From Perna viridis (Eukaryota), in the NCBI GenBank assembly GCA_037379345.1, contig CM074522.1:4030001-4094000 (forward strand): a stretch of 64,000 nt of DNA. The letters are read 5' to 3'. Shown here in pieces: positions 426 to 27,050 of this stretch; position 1 is the stretch's first letter, and each line of letters opens with the position of its first letter. The notes under the pieces are model-generated. The model saw only the letters and a list, made by a program, of their open reading frames with translations. It was not told the origin of the DNA and did no database searches. The position numbers were made by a program, and so were the translations under genes.

Positions 426-509
426 AGCTAAAACTACACGGTGGTTTAAGATTAAATTTTCATGTTCTGGCTTTTAACAATACTTTTTTTCATATATTCG
501 AAAGAGCAG

Positions 510-720
510 GCTTTTTCATTTGTCAATCAAAGTAAAAATTCCTTAAGAGTGAAAATGATTCTTTTATCTTATTGGACGACGTGAAGGAAGGTCCTTTTTA
601 TTTACTTATTTGCGCAGTTAATGTAGGTATGGCACGCGACAATCTGTTTTTAGAGTGTGGGAAAAACACGCCCCCTTTTAGATGAAATGAACACCTGTAA
701 TTGACTGTCTTACCTGAACT
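510..720 (-). promoter_or_regulatory. HES proximal promoter module (copy A): E-box, KLF/Sp, CSL, HES site, CCAAT, PBX/MEIS-like site
   Basis: On +: GGCACGCGAC 631-640 (Hairy/class C site), TGTGGGAA 656-663 (CSL/Su(H)), CACGCCC 667-673, ACACCTGT 691-698 (RCAGGTG E-box), ATTGG 571-575 (CCAAT), GTCAATCA at about 522-529 (TGATTGAC). Lies about 100-300 bp upstream of the HES ATG. Confidence 0.8.
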
Positions 721-1595
721 ACAATGATTTATTGTACAAAGTGAATCCGCAATAATAAGATATATGTCTTCGTTTACACGCTGTTCAGCCCTATCGCCAA
801 CGGTGTCCTTCTAATACAGGGAGTCTTTATGTGAATCTATATTCATCTATATGCCTGTGATTTAGCGACCCGACCTATACCAATTATGTTTTAGGAAAAA
901 AAATAAAAGTTATGTAAACTTTAAAGTACACCAGATATTTAGCAGATATTTAAAAACGTCATTATTTAAAATTTTGTTAAAGTATTTTTTTCTATGCGTA
1001 AACATCGATTTGTTAGTAATTAAACTTGTATGTTAGTTAAATTACTCATTGAAATGCAATATGGAGAGCAATGGTCTAATTCACTTGTAACCAGAAACCT
1101 TATATGCAAAGGTACTTGGAAGAAAATTAATATGATTGATATTTCTACCGAGCAGATAAGTCTTCAAAAGACAGGAATGGCTTAATATACAGTTTTAACT
1201 GCTTTTTAAATGAAAGTTTTCCGCAGGAGGATGCTTAAATTTGAAAATTTCTAATGATCAGTCAATACCAGAAATGTCCATCAACGAAAGAGGTTTTCTG
1301 TAAGCTACATATATGATACAAACATATATAAGGTCTCTTTAAATTGTCAGTATAACAGTTCGTGAAATGTTCACCTAGCAAAATTTTGGAAAGTGCTTTC
1401 TGAACCAAGATTCTCTCTTAAAACAATTTTTGACAATTCTACTAGATAACTCTGCCCTGTAAAATTTTACAGTGGAATATTTGCTAACAATTCTACTTAA
1501 AAACATGATGCTAGATATTTAGAACGCAGTACTTGAGCGTTCTGTTGTACCTTAGAATAATTCCTTGCAATTAGATATTGGGGGTTTAACGATAA

Positions 1596-1838
1596 AAGTG
1601 TAATCAAGGAACTCACGATTCTAGCGAAAATCAAAGTAATGTAATCAAGCGACAAACACCAGACGGGAAAAACAGACACACATAACAAAGAACACAAAAT
1701 AACCAAAATAATACGTACAAAGCAACAAAAAACAAATGAGCAACTCGAACTAACCTAAAAAAGCTAGGAGAATGGACCAGGTGCACCGGTTAGGTAAGCG
1801 TCTTATGTTTTTTTTTATAAACACCAGCCGAGTTGATC
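1596..1838 (-). mobile_element. Naiad-type 3' end fragment
   Basis: Reverse complement of the family 3' region (GGACCAGGTGCACCGGT...GGTAAGCGTC). Confidence 0.75.
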
Positions 1839-4227
1839 AAACAATTTTTTTTAACCCACGATGTTCACTCACAGCTCTCAAACAAATGTGTCATGCAAAT
1901 TAATTAATGGTGCAATCTCGGAACATGAACGAATACAATTCCAACATTGTATGTGGCAAGTTTAGGTTATTGACTTAGTTTGGCTTTATTGTTAAAAGGT
2001 TAAATTAATCCATTTTAAAACGAATTATTTTTTATTGCCATTTGTGCCCTGTCAAACGGCCCATGCAGATATGATATGTATAGCATAGTTTTTTTTAAAT
2101 AACCTTTATATATATCTTCATAAATAATAAAATAAATTCAAGTAAAAAACTATATATGTCAGGAAAAGTTTGCTAGGCTTGAAATAATTTGCATACAAGA
2201 ATTACGACCGTTTATACACCTTTAACTGTTTTATTATAAGTGCACTTTTATTTTTCTCTCGGTAATAAAGATGTCAGTTAAGTTAACATTTGAAATGTCT
2301 TTAACAACGCGAACATGTGAATTCACTTTTTAAATCTCCTTCTTGAGGTCGAATACATCATACATGTTAAGTAAGAAAAGAATATTAAAAGTAGTAAAAT
2401 GACATATTAAGTCTAACGCGTTCCTTTCCCACGATCCGAAGTCACACCTGATATATTTATTTATGCAAAAGGAAGATAATGTTTTTTTCTATATTTTAAA
2501 TATCTAGTTGTCATTCGTACACAATTACATTTTTGACCATAGTTTATAGCCTTTTATGACATATTAACTTTAGTTTTGAAAAATGTATACCAGTAAAACT
2601 ATCTCATTAAAACATCAAACAAATGTGAGAAAATTCCAGTTTTGAAATAAAATGCACTTTATGCTGTATAGGCTTTCCATTTATTGTAATTTAAATTCAA
2701 GGAAAATAGGACACAACATTGTTGATTTTTACCAGCAATTGAGTACTCATTTTCTTACAAGAAGTAAAACAGCTGTTCGAATATTAATAAAAAAAACCTT
2801 TCAAAGCACCTGATTTAAACCATGTATTTAATGTAATCATCTGTTTGTTTACTTTTAGGTGTCTGAAGTTTTCAGCTTGTTTTTTACTGTTGTCCTTTTG
2901 TGATTTTTTTTTTGATCCTGGAATTATTTTTTTAGCATAGACGTCCAATCGTTTGAAAATTTAATACTGGTGCTTTTTCGCAAGGAAGCAAACTATAAAA
3001 TAAAACGTTGACATGTTTATAATGAGATATTGATATGCATGTTATTTAAAAGAAGATAATTAAATATTATCTAAATTTTATACCAAGAGTAAAAATGCAA
3101 ACAGCAAACAAAATAAATTAGCTCAAGACAAACACAAACAATCAGTAAAAAATCCTGTATATTGCTATTCCATTTGTTTTTCCATAACTTGAGAACACAT
3201 AAAAACTTTCTGTAAATATATTTATTATTAGTTCTTTTTATATTTGGAAACTAAAACACAATCAAGAATCAGAAATATTCAAAAAATTAATTTGTCTTCG
3301 ACTAATCTATTACGAGAATATGTATGGTAAATATGTAAAAATGACAACAATCCCACCGGGGAATAAATGTCAACCCAAGGCTACCTACTGGTCTTCATTG
3401 AACAAAGATGAAACCCTCACACCATAGGGCAGCACTACTATACACAGGAACAGCAAAAGAGTTGCTCCTATATACTAAATAAAATAAAAATAAACTAAAG
3501 CTGAAAATGAAACAATACATACAGAGACCAGAAATTTCTGTCCTGGTACAAGCGCAAAATTGCGACTGGTTAAAACACTTTGGCGTGATCACAACACTTC
3601 CCCTTTAAAATCTTGCCACAGTGGAAAAAAATATTACACAAGTAAACAAATCTAAAAATTAATTAAAAATGTCTGAATCCCTTCATACAACGGAAATGTT
3701 GAAACTGAATACAAATTACACAAATGTGCAAACTAATGACAACTAGTATTTGACTGACATGCCAGCTCCAGACCAGTTTAATCCTACAAAAAGTTATGTC
3801 CCCAACGTATGTAAAATCAATCCAAGTACTTCCCATGCGGAGGTGAAAACCAGGGTACACCATAAGTAATACAATAAGGACTCAACCCATATTATGCCAA
3901 AATCTGCTTTTAAATATAGTGTTTTAGTGTGTTTTAATTGTTATGTAAAGACCCTATGAGCGAATCATTTTCATTATCAAAAAAAAAAAAAAAAAAAATA
4001 AATAAATAAATAAATAAAAAAAAAATAATAATAAAATAATAAAATAAAATAAAATAAAATAAAATTAACCAAAATAAAAAAAATCAAAAGAAGTAACTAA
4101 AAATGATCTAGAAGAATTCGACCAAATACTTTCACATCCCGATTTATTAAATGACCATTTGATAAGTTACATTGATTTTTGTTTTATGAGATAGCAAATT
4201 TATTAATCATGATCTTTTAACATCTAT

Positions 4228-4885
4228 ACTCAAAGCTGTCAAAGAGGGTCTCCAGTCCTACCACAACATTTGTTACTCCCGTAATGGTATTAATTCAATA
4301 TGAGTCCTGATTAAATTTGAACGATCTTTTGGAGACCCTCAAGTCAAGGTTATTATCAGACTATAATAGCATTAAAACCTATGGCTTTCCAAAACTGTTT
4401 ACTTCTATTCCCCATACTCAGTTAAAATCCCGACTTGAAAACATTATATATCTTGTTTCTGAACAAAGGCACGCCTAGATACAAATATATAGTTCTTGGT
4501 AGAGATTCCTCATACTTTGTATATACTACAGAAGTTTTATGGTCGTCATCATGAACTCGTGGATCGTTACTCTGTATCCATCTGCACCATTAAAAAAATT
4601 AGTTTGTTTAAGGTGTCATAGTTTTATTTCCTCCTATGTCTACCCAGGACTTGTCTTTTTGTGAGCAACTCGACGGGTGCTTCTAGAAAAGCAGAGGACG
4701 CTTATTCTACCCGTGCACCTGGTCTATGCTTCCAGCCTAATTTTAAGTGGAGTCTGGGTTGCTTTTATTTTTGTTTAGTTTACGTTAGGTTCTTTGTTGT
4801 GATTGTCTTTTTTCTAGCCTGGTCTTTGTCCCTGGATTACATTCTTTTGATTTCCGCTACAATCTTGGTTCCCTTGATTACTCTT
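4228..4885 (+). mobile_element. Naiad-type element, internally deleted, degenerate
   Basis: N-terminal RT-coding homology (4228-4520) is joined directly to the RT end and 3' region. Confidence 0.75.
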
Positions 4886-6227
4886 CTTCTGCTACATCCA
4901 GCGTACTCGGCTATCGTCGTCATGTTTTTTTTTTAAATGTGTACCAGTTAAGTGTCAGTCCCTATAAGAATCAGGCAGAGGGGGAAACAAAGTATTTTGA
5001 AAGTGTAATTTTTTATTATTTGCATTGGACATACATACAAATACGTGTGATTATCTTTTATGTACATGCACATCATTACAAATTAATTAAAACCTGGAAT
5101 ATCTTAGTCTGACATTGTAAATAACAGTCATATTATAATTACGAATAACATACATTTGTAAAACAAGAGCAGTTTATTTCGTATGTTGAGAAACTACAAA
5201 TTCCGTATCATACTTCCTTAAGTGTTGCTTGGCAGTCTAGTGAGCAATAAGTGTCTCGAGGGTCGTGGGAAAAGATACACGTTAAAACATGATATAATGT
5301 TGAAAGCTTTTTGATATTCTTGACTAAACAAATGATCATTTCATTCTGACCTCCAATAAAACATTTAAATGCTTGGGTTCACCTGTATTACTGTATAACG
5401 ACACAGTACAAATAAGCGTTAGGGCTGTTGACTTCTGTACAGAAAGTTTGGTCCGTATCAAATTGATTTTTTACGATTTTATAATTGAAATGGGATAATT
5501 TCTATCATACTGAAGATCAGAAAGCTTGTAAAAGTGAAAAAAAAATGAATTGTGTTTGGTGATCTGGATCGTCGTCTTACTGACATTGACTGAAGATGTT
5601 AAGAATTAGAAACAGAGGACACTGAACCCGTTTTTCAATCAAAATATTTTTCACGTACAATCCTAAATCGAATGATTTATTCGTAAATTTGCAAACTGTT
5701 AGTAATTGTGAACTAAAAATGCATTTTGATAAGTATTTTGAACGACTTTCTACATGCACATCTACTAAAGATATTTAAGTAAATAATCAGGTTCATAATA
5801 TATACCCATCAATGAACTCAGTGCTATCATCGACCAAAGTTTCAGACACTGTTGGTTTTGTTGAAACAGATGAATATAATATGAACAGACTCATAGCTAA
5901 AAGGGTTGAACAGCAACAAATGTGTATTCTTTCCATTATCACTGGTAAAATATGAGGGTAACCATTGCAAGATTGTGTTTATATATATTAATTATACACT
6001 GAAACATGTCAAAATGTAACCATTTTAGTGTGTAAGATTTGCTTCGTTTAGGAAGGTGTTTTGTTATTTCAGATTATTTCTGCATTTAAGTAGCAGGCTT
6101 TCTAAAAATCAGGCAGAAGGTGGTTCATGCATGTCAAAAACACACTGAATAGTTTTATTTCTTGTTCAGAAACAGTTGCTGATCACACAACCAGTCTTGG
6201 TTTTTCAAATTTTTGTTGCGCTTTTTG

Positions 6228-6503
6228 GGTGTCAGTACAAAGGTCCGGTTACAGGGCGTGTTAGCAAAGTGATCCTGTTATAAAGGTGTCAGTGTAGTGA
6301 TTCTGTTATTGGAGGTGTCGGCGAAATAATCCTTTATAGGAGTTGTCAGTGTAGTGTTCCTGTTATAGAAGATGTCAGTGAATTGATACTCTTATAGGAG
6401 GTGTCAGTATAGTGACCCTGTTATGAGGGATGTCAGTGGAGTGGACATGTTATAGGGGTGTCAATGTAGTGATCATGTTATAGGGGTATCAGTGAAGTGA
6501 CCC
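6228..6503. repeat. ~29-bp minisatellite, about 9-10 copies
   Basis: Consensus about GGTGTCAGTGTAGTGATCCTGTTATAGGA. Confidence 0.85.
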
Positions 6504-6532
6504 TTAGTATTAATAAAACCTAAATAAATCCT

Positions 6533-7360
6533 AGCTGATCTGATCGGAAAGAAAGAATATCGTTTGGCTAGATCCTTCAATCTCAGTTTCCGCTATATAG
6601 ATGACGTATTATTTTTAAACAATCGTAATTTCGGGGATTTGATACATTGCATCTACCCAAAAAAAAAAACACACCTACATTTGTATTTTACCCCAAAGAA
6701 CTTGAGCTAAAGGATGCTACAGACACTGTGAAGTCAGCCTCATATCTTGACCTACACTTAGAAATCGATGGTAAAGGAAAACTATTGATCAAACTTTACG
6801 ACAAACGTGATGACTTTTCATTCAGAATTGTCAACTTTACTTTCATCTGTGGCAACTTCCCTTTGGCTCCTGCATATGGAGTGTTCATATCACAACTCAT
6901 AGGTTATGCCAGAGCTTGCCGAAACTACGCAGACTTTTTATATCGCGCTAGAACTCTAACAAATAGGCTTCTGGAACAGGGTTATGTTGCTACAAGTTTG
7001 AAATCATCACTACAGAAGTTTTATGGTCGTCATCATGAACTCGTGGATCGTTATGGTGTATCCATCAGCACCATGAAAACTGATTTATTCAACGGGTCAT
7101 AGTTTTCCTTTCCTCGTTTGTCTACCCCGGACTTGACTTTTTTATGAACAACTCGGCGGGTGTTTCTAAAAAAGCAGAGGACGCTTACCCTACCGGTGCA
7201 CCTGGTCCATGCTCCCAGTTTTTAGTGGAGTCCGAGTTGCTCATTTACTTTTGTTACTTAATGTTCTTTGTTGTGTATGTCTGTTTTCCATGTCTGGTCT
7301 TTGTCCCTGGATTACATTCTTTTGATTACCGCTATAACCTTGGTTCCCTTGATTACTCTT
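6533..7360 (+). mobile_element. Naiad-type element, RT C-terminal half plus 3' region
   Basis: ORF 6647-7102 matches the 61377-61880 RT; ends GGTTCCCTTGATTACTCTTT. Confidence 0.85.
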
Positions 7361-8069
7361 TCGCAGATACACTTTTTCGCACTTTTCTGTCCACCGCCAA
7401 AGTTAGTACACCTATCAACTAATACGTTTACACAAGTAGCAGCCTTTTGCATAATTTGTAAGGCATTAGAGGAATATTATTATATTAATTTGAATTTATC
7501 TTTTGATCTTTTTTTTTAGCTGTAAAGTTCACTCTGTAATACATAATACATATTCAACAGATGAAAACAATCGAGATAAAACATTATATATCTTTTCATA
7601 ATAAAAATGTTGACAGACATAGTAACGGTCTGTTAAGATTAAAAAAATATTTTGGTCATTCGCCTCCCTTTCAATATGATTTACGTTGATTAGACACTAA
7701 ACGTCATTATAAATCCTTTAAACCTATCACGCGTGGTCATTTGAATACATGTTTTTAATTAACGATGCTGACATATATTTTTCGTCCTTACAGAGTTAAT
7801 CAAGAAAATGTGCTATTTATTACTTTTTATAAAGAAACGAGAAATTCTTGTGTATTATTAGAAGAGAAAACCGAGCAAGCGGTCGCATCATAATTACACG
7901 TACTTGTATTTTATTAACTTATTTACATTAATTTATGGTAAGAACTGATGCTTTCTGAATTGTTTATCAATAAAATCGCAAAGTAGTGAATACGCATGTA
8001 TATTAATATGAACATTTACAACGATAATCCATTAACAATTATGAATAATTAATTAGGGATATCAATGAT

Positions 8070-8352
8070 GATTTTCCTTTCCTCTTTCGTCTGCCCCGGA
8101 CTTGACTTTTTATGAGGAACTCTGCGGATGTTTCTAGAAAAAAAACAGAGGACACTTACCCTACCGGTGCACCTGGTCCATACTCTCAGTTTTTTTAGTG
8201 GAGTCCGAGTTGATTATTTACTTTTTTAACTTTGTATTATTATTTTAGTTACTTTATGTCCTTTGTTGTGTGTGTCAGTTTTCCATGTCTGGTCTTTGTC
8301 CCTGGATTCCATCCTTTTGATTTCCGCTACAATTTTGTTTCCCTTGATTACT
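8070..8352 (+). mobile_element. Naiad-type 3' end fragment
   Basis: CTTACCCTACCGGTGCACCTGGTCC ... CCCTTGATTAC. Confidence 0.8.
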
Positions 8353-10352: not shown

Positions 10353-10705
10353 CTAATCTGGTTCCCTGGTCAATATCATAAGCGCAAAAATATAGACGCC
10401 GGTCAACAGCGACTGATATGCACAATATATGAGTAAATTGCCGCTTATTAAATTAAATAAAAACACAGATAAGATAATCTAAATTAACTTTATAATTGTG
10501 CATTTATATCGAAGGATGTTATAAGTAATTTGTAAAATACTTAATCGTATTTTTCTTTGAATTTGAATATTCGAACGTATAAAAGTAAATAAAAGAATGT
10601 CATATTCGCTCAGCCAATCAAAAGACAGAAGACGTCACTGGTGACCTGGGGTTATATTTGAGACACAGTTGTGGAATGAAAATATTACCCGGGCTTCCAG
10701 ATTAA
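10353..10705. mobile_element. MITE with ~24-bp TIRs and 8-bp target-site duplication (hAT/P-like)
   Basis: CTAATCTGGTTCCCTGGTCAATAT ... ATATTACCCGGGCTTCCAGATTAA, flanked by direct TGGTCACA at 10345-10352 and 10706-10713. Confidence 0.75.
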
Positions 10706-12739
10706 TGGTCACATCATCTGATCTGTTCGGAGTACAATACATCACTTATTGATATCACCGACAGCTTTATAATGCGCGTCCTGAAACTGTTATAGTAAAG
10801 ATTGATTTGTCCTGCATATAAATAATTATGACATGAATGTAGAACCTAATACGATTTTTTTTCTTTTTTGATGTACCTACTTTAAGGTATGAAAATATAT
10901 TGTTACAGTTAGTCCGATTTCATGGTTATTTTAGTACTAAGATAGCATAATGTTGACTGTAGTAATGCATATCAGTTCAAAAAGTATACAGAAATTTAAT
11001 TTTTAATTGAACATTTGGTATTTCAAATTACATTTGAAACATGTTATCATTGACATGTACATTTTACTTCTTTAAACCCTTTCGTGTTAACTGCAAGGTA
11101 ATCAATAAACATTTACGCAAGGACAATTCTTTTTTTCTTCCAAAATCTACCTCAAAGATGTACGTGCGTTAACTGACCCGCAATTGACACAAAAGGGTCT
11201 ATGGGTGTAAGATAATGATAATGTCTGATAATGATAAACTTTAATTACTGATGGTTAAACACCATCCATTTTTTTTTTATCATGAAGCGACCTGGGATTT
11301 GATTCAGATTAGAAACTTTGTATTTTGTGCAAGCACGTATATTATATTTATATTTCAGCAGCAACCGAAACCAATATTTTTATTTGAAAATTTGGTAATG
11401 GCGAAAATATATAATCGTTTACTATAATTATAATGCTATTATCATTTCGTTCAATGAATGAGTAAAATATTTCATCTCCAAAATATGAGACATTTTTTTT
11501 TGTTCAGAAAAAGTCAGGACCCTCTCGATAAATTGACGGTACCGTGGCAACCGTCTCATATAGAATTCAGAAAATGCCAATAGTTGAGGTGATAAAAGGT
11601 GCAGAAAAAAACACCGAATAAACGATGCTTTCGGTATTCATACACCATATTGTTTACATTACTTCAGTCCCTTCTGCATATAGACCAGTAAAGAGAGATA
11701 ACCATCATCAATCCAAGTCTTAAATCAGCAAGTGCAAGAACGATAACTCTTGAAAATGCCAATTTACATAATTCTATTTCAACAGTGCGACAGCCGAATG
11801 ACAAAGTAAGACTGTCTATGTGGTGATTGTAACTGTTTCTGAGTTAGAAACAAAAGTAATTTTGTGGCTTTTGATATGCATGTTTCACTTCTTGTCTGAT
11901 TGCATAAAGACTGCTACCTAAAGAAAAACAGTGATCATGTTGTGGGAAAGTGGTTAAGCTATCACGCTCAGATTGGCAAATGAAAGCATCGTTTTATGAA
12001 TCATTTAGTCCTTTCATACTTAATATATCGACTGAAAGGGGAACAAATAGTTGTCAAAAAGTTCTCAGATATAAATATTCAAAGAGCGACATGACGTCGC
12101 CTTTTTGCTTACAACGAAAAGCTTTATTCTATATTTGAAAAAAATCTATTTTGTTTTTAATCGTGAGAAAGTGAACTAACAAACTACCTATGAAACGAAT
12201 ATGTATACGATGTTATGTTAAAAGCAAATTCCGTTGAACAAAAGTATAATTTCTTATTACAACAGTGTAATGTAAATGATAAGGAACCTTGATGGCATGC
12301 AGTTACTTTACAATGAAACCTGCCAGAAAAAAAAAACGGTAAATTATCCCCAAATCTGGCGTCGACTTCACAAAAAGTAGTAAGCGTAAGGTAAAATTGA
12401 TCGTAAATTATGACGTCACAATGCTATTTTACATAGGTTTGAATTATTTTACGCCGTGTAAACCAAACAAATATATACAAGGAACCAGTTTAAACTGAAA
12501 GCGGGATCGGCATGGACAGGTTTCACTGTGTTTATCATTTAAGTTATGTTAAATAAATTCATTATTGCATTAAATGGAACTTTTGAATATGTATTCAATA
12601 CTATTATATTCCTTTTTGCCAAAGATGGGTTCCTAATACCTAATATCCAACATTTCTTTAAGTTTATTTGTTCAGTGTATTACTATCGAAATTGACCACC
12701 ACAACAGTCTTTGAAAGAGCAATTATGCCAAATTTTATA

Positions 12740-14304: not shown

Positions 14305-14420
14305 AGTTTGCAGGTATATCAATTTATTACAGATGTTTACTTCAACTAAGATATGGGCGTGGTTTTCCCACAATAAGAAATGAGATTGTCGCGTGCCATA
14401 TTTGAATTAGACGCACCTGT
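14305..14420 (+). promoter_or_regulatory. Duplicated HES/CSL/KLF/E-box module (copy B)
   Basis: CAGGTA 14311, CAGATG 14330-14335, GGGCGTGG 14355-14362, TTCCCACA 14365-14372, GTCGCGTGCC 14388-14397, extra GCACCTGT 14413-14420. Same order and spacing as copy A, inverted. Confidence 0.7.
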
Positions 14421-15193
14421 ACCGAGGTCCTCAGACATTCCGTTAAACTCGTGACTCACACTTCTCAAAATGACATCAGATTTGGGCATAATAGTCTGCA
14501 TTTTACCATTATAACAAACAGAAACAAAGCGCAATTGTAAAAAAGGAGATACAAACAGTTTAATGAAAGATCATAGTTGAAAAGAAAACTATTTCTGAAA
14601 CAGCCACATATTGTTTGCTGAAAACTGATACTTCAATGTTGGTATAATATAAAATAATCTCAGTCATTTTTGTCCACAATAGGTTGGAGTGTTATAAAAT
14701 CTGATAAAGATAGTAGAGATTTGAAAAGTAAAAGAATTACCCGGAAGTCTTAGTAAAGCAATGATACAAAAATCATAAGTAATTGCAGGCTTCCTTGTGT
14801 TTATTAAAAAAACTTCGATAACGTTGTACATGCATTCATATAATTCCTACGAAAACTCTCTCTTTATCTTGCAAAATTGAACATCTCTTTCATGATAAAA
14901 TGTGAAAAAAACAATGCACATATTATTTACGTGATATCTAATATTTAGTACACTCTTAACCAGAAATTAAATATAGTTTCTGTAAAACTCACTGAAAGTG
15001 AGGTATCCCAGACAGACACTTTGCTATTTAATCCAAAAATCAAGATAATACTAGAGGAACAATGTAAATACCAACAAGTACTATCTTTCAAAAAAAAAAG
15101 ATAGCCGACGCAGTAAAATTTTGTTCCTTTTTATGTTTCTATACTTCTTTCATGAAAATAACACATGGCACACAATTTCAAATTTTCGATTGT

Positions 15194-15275
15194 TTTTTTT
15201 TCGAACGCAATTTCAGAATTTCGATACATTTTTTTCGAACGCAATTTCAGAATTTCGATACAGTTTTTTTCGAAC
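15194..15275. repeat. ~33-bp tandem repeat, about 2.5 copies
   Basis: TTTTTTTCGAACGCAATTTCAGAATTTCGATACA. Confidence 0.8.
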
Positions 15276-16884: not shown

Positions 16885-18048
16885 CTCGTGGATCGTTATG
16901 GTGTATCCACCTGCACCATGAAAACTGATTTATTCAACAGATCATGGTTTTCCTTTCCTCGTTTGTCTACCCCGGACTTGACTTTTTATGAACAACTCGG
17001 CGGGTGTTTCTAGAAAAGCAGAGGACGCTTACCCTACCGGTGCACCTGGTCCATGCTCCCAGTTTCTAGTGGAGTCCGGGTTACTCATTTGCTTTTGTTA
17101 CTTTGTATGTATGCTTTTAGTTACTTTATGTTCTTTGTTGTGTATGTCTGTTTTCCATGTCTGGTCTTTGTCCCTGGATTACATTCTTTTGATTACCGCT
17201 ATAACCTTGGTTCCCTTGATTACTCTTGTAAATTGTTCTTTGTGTGAGCTGATTTACCGATTATGACGCAATAACATGCAAATGCTATTTAATCAGCACT
17301 GGTATGTCCACGAAGCAATAGAAGAGGGAGTTTTAAACGCGCTGTAAAACCTAGATCCTTTAATATCAGTTTCCGCTATATACTTGACGTACTATCGTTA
17401 ATCAATCTTAGTTATGGGAATTTTACACGCAGCATCTACACGAAAGAACTTGAGATCAAGGATACTACAGACACTGTGAAGTGAGCCTCAAATCTTGACC
17501 TATACTTTGAGATGGATGGTAAAGGAAAACTATTGACCAAACTATACGACTATTTCTTTCATCTGTGGCAACATCCCTTCAGTACCAGCGTATGGAGTTT
17601 TCATGTCGCAACTCATACATTATGTCAGAGCTTGCCATAACTACGCAGATTTTTGTATCGCGCTACACTACTGACAATTAGGTTTCTGGATCAGGATTAT
17701 ATTGCTATATAAGATTAAAGTCACCACTACAGAAGTTTTATGGTCATCATGAACTCGTGGATTCAATTGCATCATGAAAACTGATTTGTTCTGAACTACC
17801 CCGGACTTGAATTTTTATGAGCAACTCGGCGGGTGTTTCTTGGATAACAGAGGACGCTTACCCAACCGGTGCACCTGGTCCATTCTCCCAGTTTTAGTGG
17901 AGTCCGAGTTGCTCATTTACCTTTTTACTTTGTATGTATTATTTTGGTAATTTTATATTCTTGTTTTATATGTCTGTTTTCCATGTCTAGTCTTTCTTCC
18001 CATATTACATTCTTTTGTTTTCCGCTAGAATCTTGGTTCCCTTGATTA
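16885..18048 (+). mobile_element. Two adjacent Naiad-type copies (16885-17228 and about 17350-18048)
   Basis: The first is the RT end plus 3' region. The second is degenerate RT from the YIDD-equivalent region plus 3' region. Confidence 0.8.
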
Positions 18049-19849
18049 CGCCGTAACCATCCATTGCGTTTGAAATGCCTGTATCAAGTCAGGACCATTG
18101 CGGCACAGGCTGCTCCGGTGGTGTAATATCTATTTCGGCTGATTCGTTTGGACTTGACTCGATTATCGACCGGATTAGTGTCCGGCAATTTGTTGTTACT
18201 TTTACTGTATGATGTTTTGGTGTCTATATTTTTATGATATCTTAAATGATAAACACACAACTGAATGACCCTTCCATTTATATATTTACTATGCAATATT
18301 TGTTTTAACCAATCATGACAATTGGTAGGAATTATAACATAAGTACAGATAGTGATGGAAAGCTGTAAAATTTCTTTGTTGGCTATTTTTGCTTCCACGT
18401 GGTTCTAAGTGGTACGAAGAAGACATGTGTACCTTTTAACCCTCGGAAAGGAAACCACAAAACTCAGAATTGTGAGAAAATTAAATATTACACAATCTCC
18501 ACTATGTGAATATTTTGCACAAAAAATAGACATGTAATGCACTGGCCATTTCTATTCTGGGGGGGGGGAGTTTTCCCGCAAGCGCAAAAGCTTTATTTAA
18601 ATTTCAGCACCGTCCGCTATCAATATATCTGCTTAAAAATCTGCTTTGTAGAGTAATGGAGAAGATGTGCATTATTTGGATGAGCACACTTTGTTTTCCG
18701 GGATCAGCGTCAAATTAAAAAAAAGAAAAAAAAACAGTTACATTGTGTATGTTCTATATTTAGGTTCAAATTTTCAATGAAGTCCGGATTCAATTTGTCC
18801 TGCTACTTAATATTTGAAGTGCATTTTCGGCCTATTTATATTATTTGCTGTTTTGAAATATCTACCAGGACATCAGTGTTCTTTTAATTATTTCTTCATC
18901 TTTTGTGGTTTGATCTAGAGTCAACTTGTTTATTTATTGTCGCATGCTAAAAATCTGTTTCTTTTTTCATATCATTGAAGAAAGAGTCAGATCAGTTACA
19001 GAATCATAGTGTTTATCGCTATTTTGTTTAAAATCCCTTTGATCTTGCTATACGATAATTTTCAATCTCACGCCAGTCGAGTGAGAATAAAAATTATCGC
19101 TAGTTTCTATGTCCTCGCGTGAAATACAAGGAACATCGTAGGAATATTTGACGACCCAAATAACCATCTGTTTGTTTACTGCATATGAAATAATGGCCAA
19201 TTTGTGGCGATATTTTCTAGTCTACAATTGAAAATGATTAAATACAGTAACTTAGAATTAGAATGATTAGAATGAATAAATCACAAAAGTATTCCACAAA
19301 TTTTAAACGCGACTGTCATAGTTAACCGGTTGTTTTTTTTTTTTTAAATATGTATCATAGCTGCACAAGATATGTGACGTCACGTAGCGCGTCGCTGAAA
19401 AATAGTCTCGAAAGGAAATTTTGCATCTCTTATAAAATTTACATATTTAGGTCAAGAAAACTGAAAATGAAAGAAAACTAATAACTTACAATTCATCAAA
19501 ACAGCGATAAACAGATTATTAAATATTTGTTTCAAGTCGCGCGAGTTTCTCATGATCATCTCGTCTCGTGGCAAAGCCGCTTGACGAGATAAGCATGCGA
19601 AACTCCCTCTCGTTGAAACAATATTGAATAATCTAATAAGTATGAGAAAGGCTTACTACAATATGAGAGTTAAAATCTAAAGCTCCACAGCAATACTATT
19701 TTAAAACATCAGCAACAACAAACAATACAGAAATAATAAGATTTGGCATGTGATATATAAATCGTCATAGATAACATTACTTCACTGCTTACAAATGAAT
19801 ATAGCATTGATTTTTGAATCAAATATGAATCACTCGGATAAAATATATA

Positions 19850-19985
19850 TGTGGGAGACAGACGCCCTACAGACCGTTCGTGTGATGACACATAAGTGCA
19901 AATGAAACAAGAATGACACGAGACACACTGTATCTAGACTGTGGGAAAACCACGCTTCTTTTGAAGTGGACTAAACACCTGTAAA
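19850..19985 (-). promoter_or_regulatory. Duplicated HES/CSL/E-box module (copy C)
   Basis: GACACGAGAC 19915-19924 (N-box CACGAG), TGTGGGAA 19940-19947, CCACGC, CACCTG 19976-19981. Spacings of 15 and 36 bp are identical to copy A. A partial TGTGGGAG..GACGCCC echo lies at about 19850-19867. Confidence 0.65.
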
Positions 19986-22900
19986 GGTGAGGTCTATCTT
20001 CTATAAATAGACATTGACATAGACACCTAATCATGACCATATCTAATATGACTGATATCATAAGTATGTTTTTCCCCTAATTTCAGTGTAGTGATTTTAA
20101 AAGATAAAAATGGCTGAATCTTTTGCTGAACAGAATGTTTTCATCATCTTAAACAACAACCACTTTTTAAAACGTGAATCTATACATGTAAAATAAATAT
20201 TTGGAAATCCCGATTTTTGTTAGATGTCTTTCATTCTAATCATTATCTATTTTGTACATATATGATTCGATAGGAAAGAAATCTTGATCTTTGAAGATAC
20301 CAAATATATTAATGACTGATGGAAGTGTTTTGAATTTTGGAAAATGAAATATTAAGGGTAAATATATAAAAAAAATATATATAAAAGATCGTACTATTGC
20401 CGTATAAAGTACTTGAAATATGATCAAAGTAAATATTTAAATTAGAGGCGTTAAAAAAAATGGTGCAAGAATTGGTAAATTCTAGAGAGAAAAAATCTTA
20501 CGTGTCACTCATATACTAGTAAATTTATAATCTAAGTAAATTATACAACCGGACAAAATGTTCTGGTCACAATACTTAATGTAATCTATTTAAAATAATA
20601 GGTAATGAGTTTTGTTTGATTTGTGTAAAAACCATGTATTTATGTGTGAAAGCCGTCAATGTCAGTAAAATAAAAGTTGAAGAAATTTTTTTTATAGCAA
20701 CAAAAACCTGCATGTGGAACATCTAAATGCAGTACATAAACTGGTGTATCCGGACGCTGTAAAGAAAAGGTAACAAATAATTAAAAATCGAAAGTAACTA
20801 TGGTTTCTAACGGAGGCGTGATGAACAAAGAAAATATTTTTTTTTTCACTTGTATTCCGAACTCGGTCGGTAATACAAAGGAAGCAGGAGATACTTACCT
20901 CTTCGGTTCATGTCATCCTAGCTCGTATTTCTCTTGAACCCGGAGTTGTCTGTTCCGTATTATTGGTTTTAGTTGCCGAATATGTTTGATTCGTTTATTC
21001 GATTGACTTCGTCCTTTTTTCAACATTGCATATTCAATGGACCATAACTCCGATTTCCTAAATAGGGCTCAGCGACTTTCGCAATCTTACTAAATGATTT
21101 TGCCCATAGGTTAAGGTTGCCAAAAGGCGGCAAAGGGTTATGTTTTCAACTTTCTCTTTAATCTAATTGTTATGCTGCAGTGCGCACTCGAACAATCGAA
21201 TTACATGCCTTAGGGTATTTTTGTCTTCATTTTAGTCATGAACGTACCAGGCCAACCGGAAGTAAGTTTTGTCTAACCGAATAAGGGCGAACAACCTAAG
21301 GCTGTACACAGCAATAAATTGCCGTCAACACGAGTTCTCATGTAATTGCCCTTTTTAACAAATTAGTTTCGACTTTTATGTTTTAAACGTTATGATTTAG
21401 AAGTGGAGTCAACAATGGCTAATTCATCTAGTTTATAAACGATGTCTATTACACCCTCCACTCACGTAAAACATTTTTATACTGGTGTTTTGATACAATC
21501 CAGTAACCTTCTGAGTAATATGTACTTTTTACATTACTGATTCTTCATACATGTAAGTAAGTGTAATATCTAGCATATTTAGTTTGCTCTTTACAATCAC
21601 AAGTCATTTTTGAAAAATTAAAATATGCAGATACTGGGGTGAGAAGAGTGGTGGTTCCGTGGCGATGGTTGAACTCTCGGCTTCTAGACTAGCCGCATGA
21701 AATTCGTCACAAACACGCATACAAATTCACAAACAGTGCAAAGAAAAACAGTTTGTCTTTCAATAAGTCTATGGAATACATTTGCTATCTGCAGGATTTC
21801 AGTGTATGTTCATTGCTGACATTTATCTACCTGCTCCGTATTCCTGTCTGTAAAAATCTCCACTTCATTTCGATCACTTTATGTTTCTTGTAAATAAGAA
21901 TATATGTTGATGTTGTCAAAAATCGTTACTTGACTACTGGATGGTCATAACATGGTACAATCTACTGTCCAGTATGCCGCTCGAGGGCGGGTTTCTATAC
22001 GACACTAACTACTCTTTGAAGTTATACTTGCATTTCATAATTTATAGCAGTATATGCATTAAATATGCATTTCAAATTAAGTCCTCAATTCTCTATGCAT
22101 TTCAAGCTATATAATTTGATATTAAAATATAAAACTTAACGAAGATGCATATTGATAATATCTAATCTAATATAGTGAATAGTGGTTGTTGATTAATAGC
22201 CATAAACCGAGTTTCAATTGATGGTATCACTACCAAAGATTGCAAAGGTTCTTTAAACACATCTATTTAAAAACTCAACGTCATACTTACTAATGGTAGG
22301 TGCATTGTGGATCTAAGTCAATGTTTCTTTTCTTTCTTATTTTCAGTATTTAGGTACATGTACATGTCATTGCACTTTATTTTTCTGTTTCCTGTGTTCC
22401 TGTTTTGACCATGTCTTTTGATTCTCGTAGGTCTGACTTGTCTATCGGTTTTTGACGTTTCGATATTTTTTGCCGATATGTCTACTTAAAGTTGAGGTGT
22501 TTTGTAGGTAAAATCTACTCCAATCATTTCTGATATTCACCGGAACGACGTTTCATAAAAAGCTGAGTACATCTAAATATTTTGGTCCACTTGGTCCATG
22601 ATGCATCTTTACTTAAACTCCGATTTTGGTTTTATTCTTGTTTTAGTTTTCTGTCTTGTTTGCTTTGACTTACTGATGGATTTTCTTTGTAATCTATATT
22701 AATGTCGAGTTTGTATTTATGAAAAAATATATTTATATTTTTTTTAATTGATTTTCTACTAACTTGATAAACTAATTAACAATCACTGAGTGAAAGAATC
22801 ACAAACGAGGAACTGTTTTCGACGAAAATATTGCTAGGAATACTAACATGATAATACTAAAAAAAGAACATAAAAGTGCATCGAAAAAAAACCTAAAAAA

Positions 22901-23727
22901 TTCAAACAAACAAAAAACCAAACCAAAGTAAACAAAACAAATTGCACTTCATTTTAAGACAACTAAGAAGTACAAAAGGTATTGGGTTCTACTATAATAA
23001 TATTAAAAAAATATAAACAAGCACTTTTATCATAAAACAACAGTAATATATAATGGGGCACTGATCGAGTACGTTATTTCACTATCTGATTTAATCTAGC
23101 CACCACACACAAACATTGGAAATGAATTTTACAAACCCACTATACTTTCAACTCAAGAACCCAGTCATTTTTAGGCATGTCTACTCCTGTTTTTCGATAC
23201 TGCTGCCCGTGTACACGTAACTCCTAAAGTGATTCACAATGATACTACGCTTTCGCAACATATTTATGGCTGGTACGCCGTGTGCGTTTAGTGGTACTTT
23301 ATTGTATATATATCGGCTGAATAATCAAGTTCATGTAGAGGTATATAACACATTAATTCTCAGAACTTTTTACATTTATATAACAGTCTATATAAAAATC
23401 AGGTAGGAAGGGATCCATGGATGTCAACAACCCATGCACCAAAAACCGACGCGTCAGCAGTGGGATGATTTATATACGTCGAAGTCCAAAAGAGTGGCCT
23501 AAAGCAATAGCAATAAAAACTCCCACAAAAAACGGGGAGTGACATCGGGTGCATCGATAGGGTAAGCAAGTTCTGTTTCGCCAACGGCACCTACCATATC
23601 GTAAGTGAGTATAATCTGGTAATAATCTATCAACAATAAGGCAATATTTTGCGACTCATGTCAAACACTTTTGACACTAGGGTGTAATCATTCATCAACT
23701 AACCTTTCTTTATTTCGAAATTAAAAA

Positions 23728-23825
23728 CAGACAACAGTCAGAGAACAGTCAGATAACAGTCAGAGAACGGTCAGACAACAGTCAAAGAACGGTCAGACAA
23801 CAGTCGGAGAACAATCAGACAACAC
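23728..23825. repeat. 11-bp tandem repeat, about 9 copies
   Basis: CAGA(C/G)AACAGT units. Confidence 0.85.
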
Positions 23826-24189
23826 CAGTGTTAGTTTGACATTCTGTTGCTGTAAGATAAACATTTAATAGATATATATTGTATATGAAATTGGCACATT
23901 GCAAGATTGATTAATCATTCTTGGCTAATTTGATTTCGCTATCATTACCTACATCTTGCTTAAGTAAATCGAAAAATAGCATCTTGTGTTTGTTGTTTTT
24001 TTACACCACAAATTACCTCTACCACAGACAGCTTCTGAATTCTCTATGGCATGGTTTGTCTTATAATTTCGAAGTGCGTCTACGTGAAAAGAAGTAAATA
24101 AATGTGTTTCCTAAGAGTCGTCAATACACTTCCAAATTTTGATTTTATTCTTGCAAGTCAGCTTCACAAAGCAAAAGTAAAGTGATAAT

Positions 24190-24820
24190 GGATACTTCAG
24201 ACACTATGAAGTCAGCCTCATATCATGACCTGCACTTAGAGATCGATAGGTAAAGGAAAACTATTGACTAAACTATACGACAAACGCGATGCCTTTTCAT
24301 TATGTATAGTCAACTTTCCTTTTATCTGTGGCAACATCCCTTCAGTACCTGCGTATAAAGTTTTCATATCACAACTCATACGTTATACCATAGCTTGACG
24401 TAAATATGCAGACTTTTCGTATCGCCTTAGACTTCTTAAAACTAGGCTTCTGGAACAGGGTTATGTTGCTACAAGTCACCACTACAGAAGTTTAATGGTC
24501 GTCATCATGAACTCGTGTATTGTTTCGGTTTATCCACCTGCACATGAAAACTTGTAATAGTTTTTTTTCCCTCTTTCGTCTACTCTAGACTTGACTTTTT
24601 ATGAGCAACTCGGCGAATGTTTCTAGAATAGAATAGCAGAGGAGGTTTACCCTACCGGTGCACCAGGTCCATGCTCTCAGTTGTTTTTTTTTATTTTTTT
24701 TAAATTTTTTTTTTATTTTATAAAAAAATCTTTGTTGTGTTTGTCTGTTTCCATGTCTGGCCTTTGTTCCTGGATTACATTCGTTTGATTTCTTCTAGAA
24801 TATTGGTTCCCTTGATTACC
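24190..24820 (+). mobile_element. Naiad-type element, degenerate
   Basis: Homologous to 6715-7355. Confidence 0.8.
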
Positions 24821-26848
24821 TTGGTTACCGGAATTACGAAGATGTAATTAATAGCTAGATGAACCCTACCCTAAACTTTGTGAGGTTTTTAGTGGTCAAG
24901 GAAGCCGAGGAGGTCGGACGAAAAAAAAGATTACTCGATTATCTTAAATACACCCACAATATGATATTGATATTATTTTCTTGATTGCATGATAAATGAA
25001 ATGAAATGAAATAATTCTTACCTTCTAGGGCACGTGGGTGTCACTCCCGGTTTTTCGTGGAAGTTCATATGTTGCAGGTGTTTTTGTTTGGTGTGTGTGT
25101 CTGTTATCAAATATTTCTCAATATTACGTCTGCGCCAATCTGTTAGAGTACAATTACTCGAACTGACATAGAGTAGCGTAATCAAAGAATAATTTTGATT
25201 AAATTAACTTCTGTGTCATGTGCTATAGGTGGATTCCAGAGGGATTCGGGCACGATAGCCTGCCCCTTATTGTTGTATGTACGAAAAAAAAATCGACACT
25301 CGTATGGGTTGTATTTTTGCAATTATATAATAATAAATAACACCAACATACCGAATCAAGGATGTAACTGTTTTTTTTTTATCTAAGTTAAATATGGGAA
25401 TTTATAACCATCCACATAAATTCAAGTTTATTCAATGTATATGTCTTTAATGTGAGTTATGTTCAGAAATATAGTGTCGTTGAAATATTTTCTCTGAAAA
25501 GATTTAAAACATACGGTGAAAGGTGAAATTCAGTATCGTGGGAACGCTGTATTTTTACTGAAAATGTCATTTTACAGCTTGTAAACTCTTACATGACACT
25601 TATGAAGTATGTTTAAATTTTTTGCTCCAGAAATGGGCGTTTAAATGCATCTCATTTATTTATCTGTTTCGCTCATTGCAGTCATATCTCATCCTGGTTT
25701 AAGTTTCACATTTCAGTAAAAAAATATCTTAAATTTCGATGCACTACTTTGGACCATATGTTTCAAGCAATGAGCGCTTCGTTGTTTAAATGGTGGTTAT
25801 CATTTTACATCGGGTCTCGGAACACAATCTATTAGAATCATCAAAAAATGAGACAAGTACGGTCCAACATTTAAATAGAACTACGAGTAATAAACCGATT
25901 GAAACCATTCGCGGATTTGAAAAGAAATAAAAACTATGTCAGTATATGTAACATAGGCGAGACACGAAGAAACAAACATGCACATAAATTATATGAACAT
26001 TTGCACGAACTATTATATTCGAATATTTAGTGGTCAATAATCAGAAAAAGAAACGTTAACACATCAAAAGGTCATTTTTGTTTTCATTTGTTTTTATTGC
26101 TTTTAGCTTCCATATTTCCTCGATTTAACGTTTTACCAGAATGCAACTACATACTATACGTGCATAATAATTCATATATGGCACAATAACCGGGTTATTT
26201 CATAACATGGTGGAAACGGGAATATATGATTTACCTCCTTTTTATGTAAATATACTTACAGAAGAAGAAGATGGTTTGTATCCAATTAAGGTGTCTCGGG
26301 GCGCATATGATTTACAATGATCAATGAATACTTAATATAAAGACACAATATAAAATAAAATTTGAAATATTACACCATGGATGGGAATCAGTTTCTTCCA
26401 GATTCAGAGAAATAATGAATTATTCAAAGTCTAACACACTATTTCTTGTTAAATGCTAGTGAACATATACGATGAGGTTAACCCATGATTATCGCCTCAC
26501 TGAGAAGAATGAATTGATAAACATACCAATGGCCTTTAATATATCTAAGATCTCCTTGTCTCATAAGAGAAAGAACATTTTGAAGAGTTATTCAGATTAC
26601 AAATTTTTACACATTGTATAAAAACAACTATTTTTCTGTTCTACAGAAGGTAAAATCATTCGTCAATTAGTTGAGTTAACCCAAGGCAAGCTAACAACCT
26701 ATCCAAGTTGTCTTAAAATTGGTTCGTGACTAGTTTTTGGTTCGACTTGTCATGTTTTATAGTTTCAAAATATTGTCGGTATTATTAGACGGAGAGTAAA
26801 CCACCGAAACACGTGACTGAGATTTTTAATCATTTTGGTTACGGTTAT

Positions 26849-27050
26849 GTTCAGGTACGACAATTATTTACAGGTGTTCATTTCAACTAAAAGTAGGCGT
26901 GTTTTTCCCACACTCTACAAAACAGACTGTCGCGTGCCGGTTAATGATAAAATATACGAATGTTCCACAAAGGGAAACGTTCCGATGCATAGACCAATCA
27001 AATAACACTATGACAATCCATGGGACCACGACTTTCAAGTTTGATTGACA
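26849..27050 (+). promoter_or_regulatory. Near-complete duplicate of the HES promoter (copy D)
   Basis: About 90 bp core is roughly 85-90% identical (by eye) to the reverse complement of 631-719: CAGGTG 26871-26876, TTCCCACA 26905-26912, GTCGCGTGCC 26929-26938. CCAAT (26994) and TTGATTGACA (27041) are retained in otherwise diverged sequence. Confidence 0.75.

What the first reader, a model, noticed from the sequence alone, without database searches (positions are those of the whole stretch)
631..27050. Rigid-grammar Notch/HES/proneural cis-regulatory module repeated four times upstream of a HES gene
Seen: the same ordered motif set occurs at 631-716 (HES promoter), 14311-14397, 19915-19981 and 26852-26938, alternating in orientation. 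The HES-site-to-CSL spacer is 15, 15, 15 and 16 bp. The CSL-to-E-box offset is 36, 37, 36 and 36 bp. The CSL octamer TGTGGGAA is invariant. Changes inside motifs preserve function: CACGCG becomes CACGAG (class C site to N-box, both bound by HES) in copy C, and CAGGTG becomes CAGATG (still an E-box) in copy B. Spacer sequence drifts in B and C. Established: GGCACGCGAC is the classic Hairy site, YGTGRGAA is the CSL site, RCAGSTG is the proneural site, and HES genes are autorepressed Notch targets. The canonical Su(H) paired site is absent here; a HES repressor site sits 15-16 bp from a single CSL site instead. Inference: the HES promoter was serially duplicated and the copies are kept under selection as an array of shadow enhancers, or as promoters, integrating Notch activation, HES autorepression and proneural input.
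Basis: partly seen in the sequence, partly recalled or inferred. Interest (0 to 1): 0.9.

Follow-up and report, generated by a model that had tools for sequence, protein, structure and literature searches.

The report
Ancient HES promoter core, copied fourfold
A 95-base block of binding sites for Notch-pathway factors, which sits in front of HES genes in mussels, pearl oysters, freshwater mussels and abalone, is present in this mussel-like genome once as the working HES promoter and three more times further upstream, where its binding sites are preserved while everything around them has decayed.

Summary
All motifs and spacers are as reported.

- **Copy number.** A profile search finds exactly these four in the 723-Mb genome. 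They lie in single-copy DNA and are not a transposon, an RNA gene or relic HES exons.
- **Constraint.** Named motif columns vary far less than spacers (3/25 against 24/45 columns; 6% against 31% pairwise differences). Flanks are at random level, except that copy D also keeps A's CCAAT and TGATTGACA promoter motifs.
- **Comparison with other molluscs.** The same block lies 200-380 bp upstream of HES genes in Mytilus. Its core, a single CSL site 15-17 bp from a HES class-C site, also occurs in Pinctada, Potamilus and Haliotis. Haliotis keeps the whole order, CAGGTA to TGATTGACA. Mytilus also has a gene-less inverted copy that resembles B.

The module is therefore an ancient molluscan HES promoter core, and the fixed CSL-to-HES spacing is conserved. 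Enhancer function of B, C and D is inferred only. Four RNA-like runs that hold about half of the HES gene's words show no transcript from D. The "proneural" label is doubtful, because CAGGTR is what is conserved.

The parts
625..720 (-). Module A: working proximal-promoter core of the HES gene. Order in the gene's direction: CAGGTA, ACAGGTG, GCGTGTTTTTCCCACA (CSL site), 15 bp, GTCGCGTGCC (HES class-C site).
   Evidence: 96.8 bits. 83-86% identical to the Mytilus HES promoter modules.
472..624 (-). Rest of the proximal promoter of gene A, with CCAAT (571-575) and TGATTGACA (521-529). The transcription start was not mapped.
   Evidence: Aligns with the Mytilus alpha promoter flank (z 16; 189-bp blastn hit).
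1..425 (-). 5' part of the HES gene. Exon 1 coding part is about 425-342 and starts MSNEEL. Exon 2 (basic region, KPVMEKRRRARIN) starts near 66 and runs off the left edge of the window. Exons 3 and 4 (Orange domain, WRPW end) lie at G000:C12:4027246-4029100.
14307..14404 (+). Module B: distal copy 13.7 kb upstream, inverted relative to the gene. E-box changed to CAGATG; CSL site and GTCGCGTGCC intact. A TTTGAATTAGAC-like remnant follows 3 bp after the HES site.
   Evidence: 88.6 bits. Flanks are single copy. Groups with the Mytilus orphan copies with weak support (78/80).
19909..20005 (-). Module C: distal copy 19.3 kb upstream, same direction as the gene, and the most diverged. CAGGTA is lost, and the HES site is changed to GTCTCGTGTC (CACGAG core).
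   Evidence: 84.1 bits. Flanks are single copy. No HES exon relics nearby.
26848..26943 (+). Module D: distal copy 26.2 kb upstream, inverted. 94% identical to A over the 70-column core.
   Evidence: (92.6 bits).
26944..27101 (+). Remainder of the promoter copy attached to D, with CCAAT (26994-26998) and TGATTGACA (27042-27050). Homology to A ends at A position 472, before the start codon.
   Evidence: z 4.1. No RNA contig lies on 26697-27090 in four runs.

Best explanation
The four elements are paralogous copies of the core of an ancient molluscan HES proximal promoter.

**Layout.** In the gene's direction the core reads: a CAGGTA box; an ACAGGTG box; about 28 bp; one CSL/Su(H) site in reverse orientation with a conserved G-rich left flank; 15-16 bp; and a HES class-C site, GTCGCGTGCC. 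In full promoters a CCAAT box and TGATTGACA follow.

**The copies.**
- A is the working promoter of the HES gene that leaves the window on the minus strand.
- D is a younger or gene-converted inverted duplicate of the whole proximal promoter, up to about the transcription start.
- B and C are older copies. Only the ~95-bp core survives, embedded in unique DNA.

**Shown.** Common descent, restriction to this locus, motif-biased conservation, and deep conservation of the architecture and of the CSL-to-HES-site spacing in other molluscs.

**Inferred mechanism.** The distal copies bind the same factors as the promoter. CSL with the Notch intracellular domain would activate. The HES protein would bind 15-16 bp away and shut the element off again, by Groucho recruitment and possibly by direct contact with CSL. 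A CAGGTR-binding factor (proneural bHLH or Snail/ZEB) would set competence. On this reading they act as redundant distal Notch-responsive, HES-autorepressed enhancers of the one HES gene.
For: - **Four copies and no more.** Profile search of the whole genome. Strict patterns find only these (control 1). The 16-mer GCGTGNTTTTCCCACA occurs 5 times in 723 Mb: these four plus the promoter of a paralogous HES gene.
- **Genomic setting.** Flanks are single-copy DNA. The next genes are a GPCR at 41.7 kb and a Cys-loop channel at 57.4 kb, so B, C and D lie in the 41-kb HES upstream intergenic region.
- **Motif-biased conservation.** 3/25 motif columns vary against 24/45 spacer columns (Fisher p 0.0005). 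Pairwise differences are 6% against 31%.
- **Flanks.** At random level, except A-D downstream (z 4.1), which shares CCAAT and TTTGATTGACA.
- **Cross-species promoters.** The module is found at 75.7 bits in front of the Mytilus galloprovincialis and M. trossulus HES gene, and at 56-57 bits in front of a second Mytilus HES gene.
- **Cross-species core.** TTCCCAC(A/G), 15-17 bp, (G/T)CGCGTG lies 240-380 bp upstream of HES genes in Pinctada, Potamilus and Haliotis. Sinanodonta has CACGTG instead. Haliotis keeps the full order, CAGGTA to GATTGAC.
- **Orphan copy in Mytilus.** Mytilus has a gene-less inverted copy 3.3-5.4 kb downstream of one HES gene. It shares a 1-bp insertion, TAAG, and an adjacent ATATTTGA..GAC with copy B.
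- **Factor identity.** HES proteins bind class C, class B and N-box sites, and Hes1 represses its own promoter and interacts with RBP-J (PMC1950541).
Against: - There is no functional evidence of any kind: no accessibility, binding or reporter data.
- The identity of the binding factors is inferred from motif matches only. CGCGTG also contains an AhR/ARNT-type GCGTG core, and CAGGTR fits Snail/ZEB.
- A-D identity (94% including spacers, with sharp edges) could reflect gene conversion rather than selection.
- C has lost one box and changed its HES site, as expected under relaxed constraint.
- Distal copies could not be sought in relatives beyond 10 kb from the genes. Long-term retention of B rests on a weakly supported grouping with the Mytilus orphan (bootstrap 78; flank z 1.7).
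Confidence: 0.55

Rival explanations
1. B, C and perhaps D are relic promoters left after loss of neighbouring HES paralogues. They have no present function and are simply not yet erased. In Mytilus two HES genes lie in tandem 61 kb apart with an inverted orphan copy between them. On this reading C would be the promoter of the lost upstream gene and B the orphan.
For: - The HES family evolves by lineage-specific tandem duplication (PMC4172395).
- Mytilus trossulus has two module-bearing HES genes on one chromosome, with ranges 6241203-6266165 and 6307611-6332609, plus an orphan copy.
- The order and orientation C (forward), B (inverted), A (forward) match the Mytilus order: alpha promoter, orphan, beta promoter.
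- C is the most degenerate copy.
Against: - Flanks of B and C are at random level, yet the CSL site, its GCGTG flank and the HES site are invariant or change only to another HES-type site. A neutral relic should decay evenly.
- No exon relics were found with the gene's own exons or with Mytilus proteins.
- If B is orthologous to the Mytilus orphan, it has outlasted divergence that reduced the HES C-terminal protein to about 30% identity.
- This history is compatible with later co-option as enhancers, so it is a rival only in its 'no function' form.
Confidence: 0.2
2. The distal copies are promoters, not enhancers. They would drive unannotated non-coding or alternative transcripts, for example D as a captured promoter pointing toward the downstream GPCR gene.
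For: - D keeps the CCAAT and TGATTGACA promoter motifs at the same distances as A.
- C is followed by a TATA-like run about 70 bp downstream.
- A low-depth contig piece lies at 27091-27164 in three of four runs.
Against: - In four RNA-like runs from four studies that hold about half of the sampled words of a 3-kb stretch of the HES gene, no contig covers 26697-27090. Unique DNA up to 29.8 kb is essentially empty.
- The 27091-27164 piece continues into a dispersed repeat found on other chromosomes. The window sequence before 27164 resembles that repeat, so it is a repeat fragment and not a spliced exon.
- No credible ORF follows B, C or D.
- B and C were not tested with reads.
Confidence: 0.15
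3. Sequence similarity among the copies, above all A and D, is kept by non-allelic gene conversion, with no selection on the distal copies.
For: - A and D are 94% identical over the core, including spacers.
- Identity drops abruptly at both edges while the adjacent promoter is near saturation.
Against: - B and C are 21-32% diverged in the core from each other and from A and D, with a star-like pattern, so they have not been converted recently. Their differences still avoid the motifs.
- Conversion does not explain the preservation of the CCAAT and TGATTGACA islands outside the high-identity tract in D.
Confidence: 0.08
4. The block is a small mobile element or a small structured RNA gene.
For: Short length (~95 bp), sharp edges and both orientations.
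Against: - Only four copies in 723 Mb, all within 27 kb.
- No terminal inverted repeats, and the flanks are unique.
- Fold z-scores range from -1.9 to +0.5 with no shared structure.
- No Rfam match in 1-42000.
Confidence: 0.02

Closest known systems
Su(H) paired site (SPS) Notch-response elements of Drosophila E(spl) genes and vertebrate Hes1/Hes5/Hes7 promoters
   Same: Promoter-proximal CSL site in a HES-family gene, with HES-type repressor sites and CAGGTG-type boxes nearby. A fixed architecture is conserved over very long times (as summarised for Rebeiz et al. 2012 in PMC4887206).
   Different: There is one CSL site only. No second site lies head-to-head at 15-17 bp. The partner at that distance is a HES class-C site on the promoter side, in an orientation that cannot form an SPS.
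Hes1 negative autoregulation through N-boxes in its own promoter
   Same: HES-type sites (class C CACGCG, class B CACGTG in paralogues and Sinanodonta, CACGAG in copy C) lie next to the Notch input of a HES gene (PMC1950541).
   Different: Here there is a single site at a conserved 15-17 bp from the CSL site, rather than several N-boxes at loose distances. Binding is untested.
Shadow (redundant distal) enhancers and promoter-derived enhancers
   Same: Several elements with the same site content lie at one locus. The distal ones derive from the promoter sequence itself.
   Different: Known shadow enhancers usually share inputs but not sequence ancestry. Here the copies are recognisable paralogues of a 95-bp promoter core. 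Activity is unproven.
Tandem HES gene clusters, such as the E(spl) complex and lophotrochozoan HES clusters
   Same: A repeated Notch-responsive promoter architecture within tens of kilobases. HES genes duplicate in tandem often (PMC4172395).
   Different: Only one HES gene is present. Three of the four promoter cores have no gene.

Membership tests
Su(H) paired site (SPS) | Two CSL sites (YGTGRGAA) head-to-head, 15-17 bp apart | tested here: not met
   All 26 GTGRGAA cores in the window are listed. No plus site is followed by a minus site at that distance. The modules hold one site each.
CSL plus proneural 'S+A' Notch code | CSL site with a nearby proneural E-box RCAGSTG | tested here: inconclusive
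   ACAGGTG is present in A, C and D, and CAGATG in B. Across molluscs the conserved core is CAGGTR, and unionids carry CAGGTA twice, which is not an E-box. The bound factor is not identified.
HES autoregulatory promoter | HES-binding site (N-box, class C or class B) in the promoter of a HES gene | tested here: met
   GGCACGCGAC lies about 205 bp upstream of the start codon of a gene with bHLH, Orange domain and WRPW. Site classes follow PMC1950541.
HES autoregulatory promoter | HES protein binds the site and represses | not testable with these tools
   Needs EMSA, ChIP or a reporter.
Shadow enhancers | Two or more separate elements at one locus with the same inputs | tested here: met
   Four copies with the same site set lie at 0.6, 14.3, 19.9 and 26.9 kb.
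Shadow enhancers | Overlapping enhancer activity on the same gene | not testable with these tools
   No accessibility or reporter data. RNA contigs give no signal at D.
Transposable element / MITE | Many dispersed copies with terminal repeats and target duplications | tested here: not met
   Four copies genome-wide, all at this locus. Flanks are unique.
Conserved molluscan HES promoter architecture (proposed here) | Reverse CSL site 15-17 bp upstream of (G/T)CGCGTG, a few hundred bp before a HES gene | tested here: met
   Found in this genome (A), Mytilus (three species, two genes), Pinctada, Potamilus and Haliotis. Each is the only hit in its 14-26-kb locus, apart from the Mytilus edulis orphan copy. 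Not found at the Liolophura and Lineus genes fetched.

The most novel reading that the evidence does not exclude
Molluscs may use a Notch-response code of their own, in place of the paired CSL site of arthropods and deuterostomes. It would consist of a single CSL site locked 15-17 bp from a HES class-C site, preceded by two CAGGTR boxes. It has been conserved since before bivalves and gastropods split. It would behave as a self-contained ~95-bp unit that can be copied to new positions and kept by selection as a distal Notch-on, HES-off switch. This genome would hold three such copies and Mytilus one.
Probability: 0.35. Interest if true: 0.8.

Novelty: new variant of a known kind. Interest (0 to 1): 0.62.

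Why it matters
Notch control of HES genes is one of the oldest regulatory links in animals. However, conserved site architecture has been described only for arthropods and deuterostomes, both built on the paired CSL site.

A different fixed architecture, shared by bivalves and a gastropod, would make spiralian Notch target logic directly testable. It would also give a natural test of regulatory "grammar": the same 95-bp unit exists as a promoter, as a full promoter copy without a gene, and as bare cores. The 15-17 bp coupling of an activator site to the site of the gene's own repressor suggests a built-in off-switch. That is relevant to pulsatile or oscillatory HES expression.

Tried and rejected
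- **Transposon.** Rejected by copy number and unique flanks. Nearby repeats are separate from the modules: a 630-bp high-copy element at 19012-19639, and Penelope-like fragments at 16.9-18.0, 24.2-24.8, 27.4 and 28.6-30.8 kb.
- **Small RNA gene.** No stable or shared fold and no Rfam hit.
- **Hidden HES genes or pseudo-exons beside B, C and D.** None found by motif scan, Pfam genome search or tblastn with the gene's own exons and Mytilus proteins.
- **Cryptic paired CSL site.** None.
- **Larger duplicated segments.** Pairwise blastn of 6-kb neighbourhoods shows only the modules, shared repeats and the 250-bp A-D promoter homology.
- **D as an active promoter.** No support from four RNA-like runs. 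The loose end at 27164 before a GT looked like a splice donor, but it continues into a dispersed repeat.
- **Metagenome scan for the composite.** Nothing found.
- **Orthology of gene A to Mytilus alpha or beta.** Unresolved: a polytomy in the protein tree, a best protein hit to beta, and a best promoter-flank match to alpha.
- **Distal copies in relatives beyond 10 kb.** Could not be fetched.
- **Spliced protein.** Protein searches used exon 4 by reference (L034:7246-8367, minus strand).
- **Complex prediction.** No CSL-HES complex prediction was run.
Full report
**What is in the sequence.** The four copies exist as described.

In the window's plus strand, A (625-720) and C (19909-20005) read HES site, CSL site, E-box. 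B (14307-14404) and D (26848-26943) read the reverse. The HES-site-to-CSL spacers are 15, 15, 15 and 16 bp. The CSL octamer is invariant. C has CACGAG for CACGCG, and B has CAGATG for CAGGTG.

- An invariant GCGTG-N-TTTT directly abuts the CSL site.
- A CAGGTA box lies 13 bp before the CAGGTG in A, B and D.

**The gene.** A HES gene runs leftward out of the window on the minus strand.
- Exon 1 has its start codon near 425.
- The basic-region exon lies near 66-1.
- The helix-2 exon and a last exon of 374 residues, with an Orange domain (Pfam E 5e-11) and a WRPW end, lie just left of the window.

The window is G000:C12:4030001-4094000. The functional reading of module A is therefore CAGGTA, CAGGTG, CSL (reverse), HES site, then CCAAT (571-575), TGATTGACA (521-529) and the start codon. 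Searches used exon 4 by reference.

**Copy number and genomic setting.**
- A sequence-only profile of the four copies finds exactly these four in the 723-Mb genome (84-97 bits). The next hit scores 21 bits.
- Strict patterns give the same picture.
- The 16-mer GCGTGNTTTTCCCACA occurs five times: the four copies plus the promoter of a paralogous HES gene at C12:26.487 Mb.
- The flanks of B, C and D are single-copy.
- The high-copy repeats nearby are separate from the modules.
- No HES exons, relics or other plausible ORFs lie beside B, C or D.
- The next genes are an intronless rhodopsin-type receptor at 41744-42811 and a Cys-loop channel at 57380-58627.

B, C and D therefore sit in the 41-kb intergenic region upstream of the one HES gene. 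The element does not fold as an RNA and matches no Rfam family.

**Pattern of divergence.** The 45 spacer columns have 24 (Fisher one-sided p 0.0005). Pairwise differences are 6% in motifs and 31% in spacers.

Core identities are:

| Pair | Identity |
|---|---|
| A-D | 94% |
| A-B and B-D | 79% |
| A-C and C-D | 75% |
| B-C | 68% |

Beyond the core, all flank pairs score like shuffled sequence. The exception is the downstream flank of A against D (z 4.1), which shares the CCAAT box and an 11/11 TTTGATTGACA. A-D homology ends at A position 472, before the start codon. D is thus a copy of the whole proximal promoter, and B and C are bare cores.

Two single-base indels in 45 diverged spacer columns is about what common descent alone would leave. 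The four copies by themselves do not prove a spacing rule.

**Comparison with other molluscs.** This is the decisive new evidence.

The exon-4 protein finds HES proteins of mussels and other molluscs. Their genomic loci could be fetched with 10-kb flanks. The results are:
- **Mytilus, first gene.** The profile hits the region just upstream of the Mytilus galloprovincialis and M. trossulus HES gene at 75.7 bits, with every box and both spacings intact.
- **Mytilus, second gene.** It hits a second Mytilus HES gene at 56-57 bits.
- **Core composite.** TTCCCAC(A/G), 15-17 bp, (G/T)CGCGTG lies 240-380 bp upstream of the called HES gene start in Pinctada, Potamilus and Haliotis. Sinanodonta has the class-B site CACGTG at that place. 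Each is the only such hit in its 14-26-kb locus, apart from the Mytilus edulis orphan copy.
- **Haliotis.** This gastropod keeps the entire order: CAGGTA, 16 bp, CAGGTG, about 30 bp, CSL, 16 bp, GTCGCGTGCC, CCAAT, GATTGAC.
- **This genome's own paralogues.** Two paralogous HES promoters keep the order but with 18 and 29 bp between the CSL site and a GGCACGTGG site.
- **Chiton and nemertean.** The genes fetched showed no such promoter composite. These may not be orthologues.

The module is therefore an old molluscan HES promoter architecture. From my own knowledge, the bivalve-gastropod split is Cambrian.

**Orphan copies elsewhere.** In M. edulis and M. trossulus an inverted copy lies 5.4 and 3.3 kb downstream of one HES gene, with no bHLH exon nearby. 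It has the CSL site, 16 bp, GTCGCGTGC and TTTGA(T/A)TGACA, but no CAGGTG.

In M. trossulus the two module-bearing genes lie in tandem 61 kb apart, and the orphan sits between them.

Copy B shares three features with this orphan: a 1-bp insertion before GGGCGTGG, TAAG after the CSL site, and an ATATTTGA..GAC stretch directly after the HES site. B groups with the orphan in a tree, but with weak support (78/80), and the wider flanks do not align (z 1.7).

If the grouping is real, a gene-less copy has been kept since this lineage and Mytilus parted. That is long enough for the HES C-terminal region to fall to about 30% identity.

The order C (forward), B (inverted), A (forward) matches the Mytilus order of alpha promoter, orphan, beta promoter. 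C may therefore be the promoter core of a lost neighbouring HES gene. Orthology of gene A to alpha or beta is unresolved.

**Transcription.** Twenty public runs hold part or all of a 3-kb stretch of the HES gene's 3' part. Fourteen of them are RNA-like and hold about half of its words, as expected for exons only.

Four of these, from four studies, were laid on 26500-32400. No contig lies on 26697-27090, and almost nothing lies on unique DNA up to 29.8 kb. Very deep coverage falls only on a repeat at 29.85-30.83 kb.

A low-depth piece at 27091-27164 in three runs ends before a GT. However, it continues into a dispersed repeat that the window sequence itself resembles up to that point, so it is not a spliced exon. 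There is thus no sign that D drives a stable transcript. B and C were not tested.

**Factor identity.** CGCGTG/CACGCG (class C), CACGTG (class B) and CACNAG (N-box) are the known HES/E(spl) sites. Hes1 represses its own promoter and has been reported to interact with RBP-J (PMC1950541). The switches seen here stay within that set: class C to CACGAG in copy C, and class B in Sinanodonta and in the paralogues.

The "proneural" label is weaker. What is conserved is CAGGTR, and CAGGTA is not an E-box. From my own knowledge, Snail and ZEB-type zinc-finger repressors bind CAGGTR. The CGCGTG site also contains a GCGTG core of the AhR/ARNT type.

CSL cores as such are enriched in the window (26 against 12.7 expected), and 20 of them fall in the first 38 kb.

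**Verdict.**
- **Firmly supported:** descent of the four copies from a HES promoter core, their restriction to this locus, motif-biased conservation, and the antiquity of the architecture.
- **Most likely but untested:** that B, C and D act as distal Notch-responsive, HES-repressed enhancers.
- **Remaining rivals:** relic promoters of lost paralogues, unannotated promoters, and gene conversion (for A-D).

Conserved Notch-HES site architectures have been described for arthropods and deuterostomes (Rebeiz et al. 2012, as cited in PMC4887206). I found no description of this CSL plus class-C architecture in molluscs in the searched library. That is not proof of absence.

Noticed in passing
G000:C12:26444500-26488343 (L027, L013): Two paralogous HES genes share a related promoter layout. 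In order: a reverse CSL site with GGCG(G/T)(A/G)G flank, GGCACGTGG at 18 or 29 bp, (T)GATTGACA, CCAAT, inverted CCAAT, a forward CGTGRGAA, and TATA. The order is kept but the spacing is not.
   Followed up: partly
L056:18291-18369 (-) and L052:20213-20289 (-): Mytilus trossulus and M. edulis carry a gene-less inverted copy of the HES promoter core 3.3-5.4 kb downstream of a HES gene. It lacks the CAGGTG box and has TTTGA(T/A)TGACA right after the HES site.
   Followed up: partly
window 19012-19639: A ~630-bp element with inverted ends is present in very many copies genome-wide at 84-89% identity (35,364 first-look candidates). It is MITE-like and lies 270 bp from module C.
   Followed up: no
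window 29849-30833, with related pieces at 1593-1844, 4661-4936, 6647-7422, 16928-18049, 24184-24849, 27424-27647, 28593-28856 and 61377-61880: Fragments of a dispersed element with recurring ORFs (MNNSAGVSRKAEDAY..., ...RNYADFLYRARTLTNRLLEQGY...) and no Pfam match. The 30.4-30.8 kb piece is covered at word depths of 20,000-60,000 in all four RNA-like runs.
   Followed up: partly
window 27091-27164: A contig in one run (X2) matches up to 27164 and then continues into a dispersed repeat absent from the reference at that point. Low depth over 27091-27287 is seen in three of four runs. This is probably a truncated repeat copy or an insertion/deletion polymorphism.
   Followed up: partly
window 41744-42811 (+) and 57380-58627 (+): An intronless rhodopsin-family receptor (7tm_1, E 1e-29) and an uninterrupted 415-codon open reading frame for a Cys-loop ligand-gated channel subunit (E 9e-38). 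These are the next genes beyond the HES upstream region.
   Followed up: partly
window 1-38000: CSL core motifs (GTGRGAA) are enriched: 26 in the window against 12.7 expected, with 20 in the first 38 kb. Isolated TGTGGGAA sites lie at 11941, 29842 and 37511 without the module grammar.
   Followed up: partly
window 14399-14480: Just downstream of module B lie a CACCTG box, a TGACTCA (AP-1-like) site and a TGACATCA (CRE-like) site. The other copies lack these.
   Followed up: no
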